A stretch of DNA of 21,939 bases, taken from Octopus sinensis. Taxonomy: Eukaryota. This document shows, one piece after another, positions 11,992-12,263 of the stretch; the first letter of the stretch is position 1; each line of letters starts with the position of its first letter. The notes beneath the pieces are model-generated. The model made no database searches. It worked only from the letters and a program-made list of their open reading frames with translations, and was not told the DNA's origin. The stretch is from NCBI RefSeq assembly GCF_006345805.1, contig NW_021836983.1, positions 1-21,939 of the forward strand, written 5' to 3'. The translations under genes and the position numbers were made by a program.

Positions 11992-12263
11992 TATTTCATA
12001 AAATTTGCAATGAAGGCATTACAAAGAGGGGACGAACAAGGACAGGCAAACATAAAAAGGTGTTGTAGCTGCTATAACGTTTAAAAATTTATGGTGATAA
12101 ATTTATGATATAATTTTAAAATTATGAATTACTAATTACCATTTACCTAACATGATACTCATTGCGATTTGCAATGACTTCGCTGAAAGAAAGGCATCCG
12201 ACCACCAGGGTAGAACCCTTGCTTTCTCTTTCATTTCCTTTTTTTAGGGGGGGGGGACTCCAC

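What the first reader, a model, noticed from the sequence alone, without database searches (positions are those of the whole stretch)
11992..12051. SINE-A tail is homologous to the 3' UTR end of the L1/Tx1 element: candidate SINE-LINE partnership
12021-12051 (ACAAAGAGGGGACGAACAAGGACAGGCAAAC) matches the reverse complement of SINE-A 1143-1173 at 28/31 nt. It lies at nearly the same distance from the 3' end (29 vs 27 nt), and both elements end in GAAAT(A) without poly(A). Shared 3' tails are the established mark of stringent SINE/LINE pairs (typically L2, CR1, RTE), whereas mammalian L1 recognises poly(A). A tail-sharing L1/Tx1 partner would be unusual and would identify the enzyme behind the SINE-A arrays and the U6 chimera. 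The 8-17-bp TSDs fit an APE endonuclease.
Basis: partly seen in the sequence, partly recalled or inferred. Interest (0 to 1): 0.85.

Follow-up and report, generated by a model that had tools for sequence, protein, structure and literature searches.

The report
Octopod SINE shares LINE 3' tail
A short repeat (SINE-A) in this octopus-like genome ends with the same roughly 60-base tail as a cephalopod-wide L1/Tx1-like LINE, so the SINE very probably copies itself by borrowing that LINE's reverse transcriptase; the mechanism is well known, but it is rarely seen for this LINE group.

Summary
Bases 12021-12051 match the reverse complement of SINE-A 1143-1173 at 28/31, all eight SINE-A units carry the block, and no shuffle reproduces the match. 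In both elements the block lies 28-29 nt from a 3' end reading GAAATA, with no poly(A).

The LINE (minus strand, 13620 to 11992) is a dead, 5'-truncated copy. It keeps half of the RT, a zf-RVT zinc knuckle and a 272-nt 3'UTR.

The decisive point is that the tail is not private to this copy. Relatives of this LINE from other cephalopods end in the same module, including one in the octopod Argonauta hians that has ORF1-CCHC, an APE endonuclease, RT and zf-RVT. In Argonauta at least two SINE families carry a tail almost identical to that LINE's.

The module is a pyrimidine-rich block, then a short hairpin (often with a CUUGU loop), then a 12-nt A-rich end, ...GAAAU(A/C). The hairpin is kept through compensatory changes.

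This is a stringent-type SINE/LINE tail partnership in the L1 superfamily. Placement in Tx1 proper, the exact partner subfamily in this genome, and any role in the SINE arrays or the U6 chimera remain untested.

The parts
11992..13620 (-). Dead, 5'-truncated copy of an L1/Tx1-like LINE. It corresponds to about aa 448-898 of the 912-aa relative P0018, plus the 3'UTR.
   Evidence: tblastn of P0001/P0018/P0019/P0006 gives 50-74% identity in two frames, 13620-13003 and 13007-12291. The six-frame translation shows YADD, one frameshift and in-frame stops.
12264..13620 (-). ORF2 remnant: the C-terminal half of the RT plus a CX2C...HX4C zinc knuckle. The stop codon is at 12264-12266.
   Evidence: Pfam RVT_1 (weak, E 0.003) and zf-RVT PF13966 (E 2.6e-7, above the cut-off). 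ORF list.
11992..12263 (-). LINE 3'UTR of 272 nt, about the same length as in relatives (L001 273 nt; Argonauta copy 1 about 277 nt).
   Evidence: The proximal part is 78% identical to L003. The AT-rich middle part is collinear with L001.
12021..12051 (-). Pyrimidine-rich 31-nt block, GUUUGCCUGUCCUUGUUCGUCCCCUCUUUGU, shared with SINE-A at 28/31.
12004..12025 (-). Terminal hairpin of the LINE tail: UUUGUAAUG-CCUU-CAUUGCAAA, a 9-bp stem.
   Evidence: It is in both the MFE and the centroid structure. Energy is -7.7 kcal/mol, z = -2.67, and 4/200 shuffles fold as well. It ends 12 nt from the 3' end, as in SINE-A.
11992..12003 (-). 12-nt single-stranded terminus UUUUAUGAAAUA, the presumed start site of reverse transcription.
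   Evidence: Sequence. SINE-A has the equivalent AGUAAAGAAAUA.
785..1201 (+). SINE-A array 1: a full-length unit at 785-1016 and a 5'-shortened unit at 1017-1201. The tail module of the second unit is 1143-1201.
   Evidence: (family D15). The flanking direct repeat g[g/t]tatatttat[t/g]aa matches at 12/14.
15333..15919 (+). SINE-A array 2: a full-length unit followed by two shortened units. Unit ends are at 15563, 15746 and 15919.
   Evidence: A single 17-bp target-site duplication, 15315-15331 and 15920-15936, matches at 16/17.
20348..20764 (-). SINE-A array 3: a full-length unit followed by one shortened unit, immediately downstream of the U6-like sequence.
20952..21182 (-). SINE-A monomer, full length, with the tail ending GAAACA.
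   Evidence: (I7, I22).
21861..21939 (-). 3' end of another element, cut by the window edge. It has the same tail type, ...CCCCCUCUGUGUUC-AGCC-cuguuu-GGCU-AAUAAAGAAACA, but its upstream sequence is unlike SINE-A.
4244..4418 (-). Diverged SINE that shares the SINE-A body. Its tail variant is GGGC-uuugu-GCCU (4280-4292) followed by AGAGUAGAAAAG.
   Evidence: (D16). I read the hairpin by eye from the sequence.

Best explanation
The 31-nt block belongs to a genuine 3'-terminal tail module of about 60 nt. The module has three parts: a pyrimidine-rich block, a short hairpin, and a 12-nt A-rich single-stranded end, ...GAAAU(A/C), with no poly(A).

The module belongs to a LINE lineage found across cephalopods. 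That lineage has an ORF1 with a CCHC knuckle, and an ORF2 with an APE endonuclease, an RT and a zf-RVT knuckle. This places it in the L1 superfamily; the cephalopod literature labels such elements L1-Tx1.

SINE-A, and at least two SINE families in another octopod, carry the same module at their own 3' terminus.

Inferred mechanism, by analogy with experimentally studied stringent LINEs such as the eel and zebrafish L2 elements:
1. The LINE's ORF2 protein binds the hairpin and tail of its own RNA.
2. It starts target-primed reverse transcription at the ...GAAAU(A/C) end, after its APE domain has nicked the target.
3. SINE-A RNA carrying the same tail is accepted in trans. This produces 5'-complete or shortened copies flanked by 10-17-bp target-site duplications.

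The LINE copy in the window is itself dead: it is 5'-truncated, frameshifted and carries stop codons. It belongs to a subfamily whose distal hairpin differs from SINE-A's. The actual driver of SINE-A is therefore most likely a sister subfamily of the same lineage.

Shown here: the homology, its position at the very 3' end, its conservation across LINE relatives and SINE families, and the domain content. Inferred: protein-RNA recognition and trans-mobilisation.
For: - Match of 28/31, present in all SINE-A units, never reached by shuffles.
- The block lies 28 nt (SINE-A) and 29 nt (LINE) from a GAAATA end.
- The LINE's 3'UTR is 272 nt, against 273-277 nt in relatives, and has the same layout.
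- LINE relatives end in the same module. L001...CTGTCCTTG...GGGCCCTTGTGGCCAATAAAAGAAATC. Argonauta hians L011 copy 2...CTGTGTCGGCCCTTGTGGCTAATAAAGAAATC.
- SINE-A aligns co-terminally with both of these, each 0/500 shuffles.
- The Argonauta locus holds at least 8 SINE copies with two different bodies. All end ...CTGTGTTCGGCCCTTGTGGCTAATAGAGAAATCTAT, which is nearly the LINE tail.
- Decapod-type relatives keep GGC-cttgt-GCC near the end.
- The hairpin ends 12-13 nt from the 3' end in most intact octopod copies, including the window LINE, SINE-A, the window-edge element and the Argonauta LINEs; a few degraded or variant copies depart from this.
- 88% of hairpin cells pair, a level reached by 1 of 500 shuffles. 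One pair flips from G-C (10 sequences) to C-G (7 SINE-A sequences).
- The window LINE has a wholly different 9-bp stem at the same place, z = -2.67.
- Domains: zf-RVT and RVT_1 in the window copy. ORF1 zf-CCHC, Exo_endo_phos, RVT_1 and zf-RVT in full-length relatives.
- Both the RT and the APE match human L1 ORF2p best, at 1.5e-21 and 4e-19. R2 proteins score 2e-12 for the RT, and no R1/TRAS endonuclease is hit.
- SINE-A arrays carry target-site duplications of about 14 bp (12/14 matching) and 17 bp (16/17 matching).
Against: - Only one LINE copy of this family lies in the window, and no consensus from the same genome could be built.
- Its last 29 nt are only about 55% identical to SINE-A.
- The 31-nt block itself is only partly conserved in LINE relatives. 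SINE-A against Argonauta copy 1, L008 and the decapod UTRs is not significant by local alignment.
- RNAalifold predicted no consensus structure on the MAFFT alignment. Single-sequence fold z-scores are unremarkable except for the window LINE.
- The compensatory changes amount to only a few evolutionary events.
- Other LINE clades of the genome (RTE, CR1, Dong-R4) could not be screened for a better tail match.
- There is no functional evidence.
Confidence: 0.8

Rival explanations
1. Copy-specific chimera: a SINE-A fragment was inserted or fused at the end of this one LINE copy, so the match says nothing about the LINE family.
For: Only one LINE copy is available in the window. A different, 5'-truncated SINE abuts the LINE's 3' end at 11991, which shows this spot has taken insertions. 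No target-site duplication could be found for the LINE.
Against: - No SINE-A body precedes the block. Upstream of it lies an AT-rich UTR collinear with L001.
- The UTR length matches relatives.
- The distal 29 nt differ from SINE-A but keep a hairpin at the same 12-nt distance. A SINE-A fragment would carry SINE-A's own hairpin.
- LINE relatives from other cephalopods carry the module at their own ends.
Confidence: 0.05
2. The tail module is promiscuous: it is shared with, or originates from, a LINE of another clade such as RTE or CR1, and that LINE is the real mobiliser of SINE-A. The L1/Tx1-like LINE would carry it only through 3'-end exchange.
For: RTE-BovB and CR1 are abundant and recently active in octopus (PMC8967140, PMC13282606), and an RTE is the LINE reported as expressed in octopus brain (PMC9115989). 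None of these could be checked here. The element at 21861-21939 has the tail but its nature is unknown.
Against: Every LINE found carrying the module belongs to the one zf-RVT/APE lineage, in octopods and, in reduced form, in decapods. That points to long vertical inheritance within this lineage. In Argonauta the match between this LINE and the SINE tails, about 36 of 38 positions by eye, is already about as close as such pairs get.
Confidence: 0.1
3. Chance or low-complexity similarity between two pyrimidine-rich stretches.
For: The block is T/C-rich and the window is full of simple repeats.
Against: 0/100 and 0/500 shuffles reach the match. The position relative to the 3' end is the same in both elements. 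Independent LINE tails from other species also match SINE-A co-terminally.
Confidence: 0.01

Closest known systems
UnaL2 / UnaSINE1 of the eel and the ZfL2 LINEs of zebrafish (stringent type, L2 clade; Kajikawa & Okada 2002, cited in PMC3747384; PMC4176376)
   Same: SINE and LINE share the 3'-terminal tens of nucleotides. A short stem-loop sits just upstream of a short non-poly(A) terminus. In those systems the ORF2 protein binds the stem-loop.
   Different: The LINE clade differs: L2 there, L1 superfamily with zf-RVT here. Recognition was shown experimentally there and is only inferred here.
LINE1-1_ZM with ZmSINE2/ZmSINE3 (maize) and L1-1_CR with SINEX-3_CR (Chlamydomonas): the known stringent pairs of the L1 clade (PMC3472496)
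   Same: An L1-clade LINE whose conserved 3' end of about 45-80 nt, with a hairpin, is shared with SINEs. This is an exception to poly(A)-based L1 recognition.
   Different: Those pairs are in plants and green algae, and L1-1_CR/SINEX-3_CR still end in poly(A). Here the host is an animal (a cephalopod), there is no poly(A), and several SINE families use the tail.
Tx1-Mar LINEs and SINEU of crocodilians (PMC4494074)
   Same: A Tx1-group LINE proposed as the mobiliser of a SINE. snRNA sequences are involved in the chimeras.
   Different: That partnership was inferred from a shared target preference and shared 5' heads, not from a shared 3' tail. No target-site specificity is seen here: the flanks of SINE-A and of the Argonauta copies all differ.
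Human L1 with Alu (relaxed type)
   Same: An L1-superfamily ORF2 protein with APE and RT. Target-site duplications are 10-17 bp. L1 is known to make U6 chimeras by template switching (cited in PMC4494074).
   Different: Human L1 recognises poly(A). Neither element here has a poly(A) tail.

Membership tests
Stringent-type SINE/LINE tail-sharing pair | The 3'-terminal sequence of the SINE is homologous to that of the LINE | tested here: met
   28/31 block, with weaker homology out to the end. SW score 45 against a maximum of 24 in shuffles.
Stringent-type SINE/LINE tail-sharing pair | The homology is co-terminal: it lies at the very 3' end of both elements | tested here: met
   The block is 28 and 29 nt from a GAAATA end. 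Alignments with L001 and Argonauta copy 2 run to the last bases of both sequences.
Stringent-type SINE/LINE tail-sharing pair | The tail belongs to the LINE family, not to a single copy | tested here: met
   It is present in LINE relatives L001, L011 (two copies) and L008, and in reduced form in L019, L020 and L021. A consensus from the same genome was not available, so this is met at lineage level only.
Stringent-type SINE/LINE tail-sharing pair | No poly(A); a short specific terminus | tested here: met
   Window copies end GAAATA or GAAACA. Argonauta copies end GAAATCTAT.
Stringent-type SINE/LINE tail-sharing pair | A conserved stem-loop in the tail | tested here: inconclusive
   For: the hairpin sits at a fixed 12-nt distance from the end in most intact copies, 88% of cells pair (1/500 shuffles), and there is one flipped pair plus a wholly different stem in the window LINE. 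Against: RNAalifold gave no consensus structure, and the compensatory events are few.
Stringent-type SINE/LINE tail-sharing pair | The LINE protein mobilises the SINE in trans through the tail | not testable with these tools
   This needs a retrotransposition assay.
L1 superfamily (L1/Tx1 group) of non-LTR retrotransposons | An N-terminal APE-type endonuclease related to L1 EN | tested here: met
   The window copy lacks this region because it is 5'-truncated. Relatives have Exo_endo_phos. Their best PDB matches are human L1 ORF2p and L1 EN at 4e-19, with no R1/TRAS endonuclease hit.
L1 superfamily (L1/Tx1 group) of non-LTR retrotransposons | The RT is closest to L1 ORF2p | tested here: met
   P0001 matches L1 ORF2p at 1.5e-21 and R2 proteins at 2e-12. 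Other APE-LINE clades have no PDB representative, so this test discriminates poorly.
L1 superfamily (L1/Tx1 group) of non-LTR retrotransposons | A C-terminal CCHC zinc knuckle after the RT | tested here: met
   zf-RVT PF13966 at E 2.6e-7 in the window copy, read as CPWC...H....C. It is also present in relatives.
Tx1 clade proper | RT phylogeny places the element inside Tx1 rather than L1 | not testable with these tools
   No Tx1 or Repbase reference sequences were available. There are only hints. The cephalopod literature lists L1-Tx1 as the only L1-type group (PMC8967140, PMC13282606). ORF1 has zf-CCHC and no Transposase_22 hit. The APE hairpin loop is longer than in human L1 and aligns through the Tx1L loop of chimera 2V0R.
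Tx1 clade proper | Target-sequence-specific insertion, typical of many Tx1 families | tested here: not met
   The flanks of the window SINE-A copies and of the Argonauta LINE and SINE copies differ from one another. L001 abuts (ATT)n and L020 is a head-to-tail tandem, which may or may not reflect targeting.
SINE (pol III, tRNA-derived) for SINE-A | A tRNA-like head with internal A and B boxes | tested here: inconclusive
   ARAGORN finds no tRNA and Rfam gives no hit at E<=1. A B-box-like GAGTTCAAATTCC is seen by eye, and the Argonauta relatives have GTTCGAATC.
SINE (pol III, tRNA-derived) for SINE-A | Short, dispersed, non-coding copies flanked by target-site duplications | tested here: met
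   Four loci in the window, with direct repeats of about 14 bp (12/14) and 17 bp (16/17). Relatives at 72-75% identity lie in the Argonauta locus.

The most novel reading that the evidence does not exclude
One cephalopod L1/Tx1-like LINE lineage may be the engine behind a large part of the octopod-specific SINE explosion. Its 3' signal would be a small CUUGU-loop hairpin followed by a 12-nt ...GAAAU(A/C) end, and several SINE families with unrelated heads would have captured that tail. The same enzyme's template jumping might also produce the single-TSD SINE-A multimers and the SINE-A/U6 composite seen in this window.
Probability: 0.3. Interest if true: 0.7.

Novelty: new member of a known kind. 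Interest (0 to 1): 0.5.

Why it matters
SINEs make up about 12% of the Octopus vulgaris genome. Nearly all of the recently active SINE families reported there (893 of 900) are listed as 'unclassified', with no partner LINE named (PMC13282606). Discussion of active octopus LINEs has centred on an RTE element (PMC9115989).

A shared, conserved 3' tail points to a specific L1/Tx1-like lineage as the enzyme source for at least some major octopod SINE families. That turns 'which LINE drives the octopus SINE expansion' into a question that can be tested directly.

It would also add an animal example to the very few L1-superfamily LINEs known to recognise a specific 3' end rather than poly(A). This bears on whether stringent recognition is ancestral in that superfamily (PMC3472496).

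I cannot exclude that curated repeat libraries such as Repbase or Dfam already record this pair. Nothing in the searchable literature did.

Tried and rejected
- The search for related loci on metagenome contigs with the LINE protein alignment returned nothing.
- The DNA-pattern scan for the tail in metagenome contigs returned six chance hits that look like ordinary GC-rich, apparently bacterial, sequence, L013-L018. That collection holds no useful cephalopod DNA.
- Contigs of the closest DNA-level relatives stop before the tail: L009, and L002-L006 from Logan runs. The first LINE copy in L002 is 3'-truncated.
- P0003 has no contig on record.
- RNAalifold on the MAFFT tail alignment gave no structure, because the alignment put SINE-A one column out of register. 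I re-aligned a shorter segment and counted the pairs explicitly.
- Rfam and ARAGORN did not recognise a tRNA in SINE-A.
- The octopus genome paper (PMC4795812) is not held.
- 'TX1' in PMC4176376 turned out to be a mutant name, not the LINE clade.
- I considered microhomology and template-jump models for the constant array junction ...GAAATA|GGTATTTCG. I could not make any of them fit the observed orientation, so I leave it unexplained. A multimeric master copy is the simplest reading.

Full report
**What the window is.** It is AT-rich eukaryotic DNA full of microsatellites and short interspersed repeats. The repeats have relatives at 72-80% identity in a locus of the octopod Argonauta hians. 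I therefore take the source to be an octopod. This is an inference, and the species is unknown.

**The observation.** The motif at 12021-12051 has one other match in the window within three mismatches. That match is 1143-1173 on the opposite strand, with 3 mismatches. None of 100 shuffles gave two matches. Aligning the LINE 3'UTR with each SINE-A unit returns the same 28-31-nt block in all eight typical units. The score is 45, against a maximum of 24 in 500 shuffles. From the rulers, SINE-A ends GAAATA at 1201, 28 nt after the block. The LINE ends GAAATA at 11992, 29 nt after it. Neither element has a poly(A) tail.

**The LINE.**
- On the minus strand, tblastn with relatives covers 13620-13003 and 13007-12291 in two frames. 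This corresponds to about residues 448-898 of the 912-aa relative P0018.
- The copy is 5'-truncated just before the YADD motif. It has one frameshift and in-frame stops, so it is dead.
- Pfam finds a weak RVT_1 match and a zf-RVT knuckle above the cut-off.
- The stop codon is at 12264-12266, and the 3'UTR is 272 nt.
- Directly downstream on the same strand lies a 5'-truncated copy of a different SINE with an unrelated tail, followed by (TA)n. No target-site duplication could be assigned to the LINE.

A protein search found relatives at 50-67% identity. Among them are a protein of Argonauta hians and one of the cuttlefish Acanthosepion pharaonis. I fetched their DNA.
- L001 is 56% identical in protein and has a 273-nt 3'UTR. 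It ends ...CTGTCCTTGCCTTTTGTATCGTCCTTAATGTTTCCGGGCCCTTGTGGCCAATAAAAGAAATC, followed by (ATT)n.
- The Argonauta locus L011 holds a LINE with an ORF1-like region, APE, RT and zf-RVT. Its UTR is about 277 nt and ends ...CTGTGTCAGCCAGGTGGCTAAGAAAGAAATT.
- L011 also holds a second, partial copy ending ...CTGTGTCGGCCCTTGTGGCTAATAAAGAAATCTAT.
- SINE-A aligns with L001 over about 55 nt and with Argonauta copy 2 over 30 nt. In both cases the alignment runs to the last bases of both sequences, and 0 of 500 shuffles score as high.
- The terminal 30 nt of SINE-A are in fact closer to these foreign LINE tails than to the LINE in the window. The upstream 31-nt block is closest to the window's LINE.
- The same Argonauta locus contains at least eight SINE copies with two different bodies. 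All end ...CTGTGTTCGGCCCTTGTGGCTAATAGAGAAATCTAT, which is almost the LINE tail of that genome.
- Decapod-type relatives L019, L020 and L021 have longer UTRs of about 700 nt. They still carry GGC-cttgt-GCC near the end, then a second hairpin and an A-rich terminus.

The module therefore belongs to the LINE lineage and has been captured by several SINE families.

**Anatomy of the tail.**
- The order is a pyrimidine-rich block, a short hairpin, then 12 single-stranded nt ending GAAAU(A/C).
- In most intact copies the hairpin ends 12-13 nt from the 3' end. This holds for SINE-A, the window LINE, the cut-off element at the window edge, and the Argonauta LINEs and most of its SINEs. A few degraded or variant copies depart from it.
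- Stems vary while staying paired: GGCC/GGCC or GGCU in the LINEs and Argonauta SINEs, GCCC/GGGY in SINE-A, and AGCC/GGCU at the window edge and in Argonauta copy 1. By eye, the diverged SINE at 4280-4292 has GGGC/GCCU.
- The window LINE has a quite different 9-bp stem, UUUGUAAUG/CAUUGCAAA, with z = -2.67.
- On a 19-sequence alignment, 88% of hairpin cells pair, a level reached by 1 of 500 shuffles. One pair flips from G-C to C-G.
- This evidence is suggestive but thin. The flips are few events, RNAalifold on the first alignment found nothing, and other single-sequence z-scores are unremarkable.

**Which LINE group?**
- Full-length relatives encode an ORF1 with a CCHC knuckle, then Exo_endo_phos, RVT_1 and zf-RVT.
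- The APE domain matches human L1 endonuclease and ORF2p at 4e-19. No R1 or TRAS endonuclease is hit.
- The RT matches L1 ORF2p at 1.5e-21, and R2 proteins at 2e-12.
- This supports the L1 superfamily. Tx1 against L1 proper could not be tested because no reference set was available.
- There are hints towards Tx1. Published cephalopod annotations list L1-Tx1 as the only L1-type group (PMC8967140, PMC13282606). ORF1 shows no Transposase_22 domain. The APE hairpin loop is long and aligns through the Tx1L loop of the chimera 2V0R.
- Target specificity, common in Tx1, is not evident, because the flanks differ.

**Mechanism.** By analogy with stringent LINEs that have been studied at the bench (PMC3747384, PMC4176376), I infer the following.
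1. The ORF2 protein binds the hairpin and tail.
2. The APE domain nicks the target.
3. Reverse transcription starts at the GAAAU(A/C) end.
4. SINE RNAs with the same tail are used in trans.

SINE-A has no T-run at its end, so a pol III transcript would run into the flank. That would require internal, sequence-specific initiation, which fits stringent recognition. This last point rests on my general knowledge of pol III termination. The direct repeats of about 14 bp (12/14) and 17 bp (16/17) around the SINE-A arrays fit an APE-type enzyme.

**Comparison with what is known.** Tail-sharing pairs are well established, mostly for the CR1, L2 and RTE clades. [quoted passage not shown] For Tx1, the SINEU/Tx1-Mar case rests on a shared target preference and shared 5' heads, not on 3' tails (PMC4494074). 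My literature searches found no description of an octopus SINE partnered with an L1/Tx1-like LINE. Curated repeat libraries could not be consulted. I rate this a new member of a known kind, with moderate interest.

**Arrays and U6.** Each SINE-A array is a full-length unit followed by one or two units that all start at GGTATTTCG, about position 54 of the full-length element. Arrays 1 and 2 are each flanked by a single pair of direct repeats. The multimers therefore moved or arose as units. A multimeric master copy is the simplest reading.

The U6-like sequence at 20775-20883 is preceded by a 54-nt SINE-A head. It is followed, after about 10 nt, by a full-length SINE-A dimer. A 76-nt segment made of flank plus head is duplicated around the upstream monomer. 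These arrangements are compatible with template switching by an L1-type RT.

Noticed in passing
window 785-1201 (+), 15333-15919 (+), 20348-20764 (-): SINE-A occurs as multimers: one full-length unit followed by one or two shortened units. The shortened units always begin at GGTATTTCG (CGTATTTCG in array 1), giving a constant junction ...AAAGAAATA|GGTATTTCG. That junction contains the palindrome GAAATAC/GTATTTC in array 1. Arrays 1 and 2 each have a single pair of flanking direct repeats, so the multimer was inserted or formed as one unit.
   Followed up: partly
window 20765-21204 (-): The composite, read on the minus strand, runs in this order: a 22-nt flank (ATATATATTATATGGGTAATTG), a full SINE-A monomer, the same 22-nt flank again, an identical 54-nt SINE-A head, a U6 snRNA-like sequence (Rfam 104 bits, 20775-20883), about 10 nt of filler, then the SINE-A dimer. 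A similar flank sequence follows at about 20327-20347. The junction between head and U6 falls where GGTATTTC overlaps the first bases of the U6 model. The origin is unresolved; template switching, duplication and repeated insertion are all possible.
   Followed up: partly
window 11858-11991 (-): A different SINE, 5'-truncated, with a B-box-like GGTTCCGGGTTCAGT. It abuts the LINE's last base and ends in ...GAAACTGAAAGAAACCCGTCGT followed by (TA)n and (CA)n. Its tail is unrelated to the SINE-A/LINE module, so it presumably uses another LINE. Relatives at 74-81% identity lie in the Argonauta locus.
   Followed up: partly
window about 13786-13822 (-): A short telomere-like run (CCCTAA)n with one irregular unit, about 170 nt upstream of the truncated 5' end of the LINE.
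   Followed up: no
window 21861-21939 (-): The 3' end of an unidentified element with the same tail type (AGCC-cuguuu-GGCU, then AAUAAAGAAACA). Its upstream sequence is unlike SINE-A, and it is cut by the window end. It could be the UTR of a LINE subfamily closer to SINE-A's partner, or another SINE family.
   Followed up: partly
L020 348-14490: Two full-length copies of the decapod-type LINE lie head to tail with a 7547-bp period. The tail ...CAATAAATAATATC runs straight into the next copy's 5' end, so this is a tandem LINE array.
   Followed up: no
L001 2020-2105: The LINE tail ...AAAAGAAATC is followed by at least 85 nt of (ATT)n, up to the contig end. This could be a terminal repeat grown by RT slippage or a microsatellite target.
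   Followed up: no
window 10360-11180: An 800-bp block of imperfect (TA)n/(TACA)n microsatellite with about 20% GC. It forms long imperfect inverted repeats.
   Followed up: no
L002-L006 (Logan runs SRR11869384-94): Five near-identical contigs from different runs carry an internally duplicated copy of the LINE closest in DNA to the window's. All five stop at the same point in the proximal 3'UTR (...GGATGCCTTT), as if the assembly breaks at a repeat boundary.
   Followed up: no
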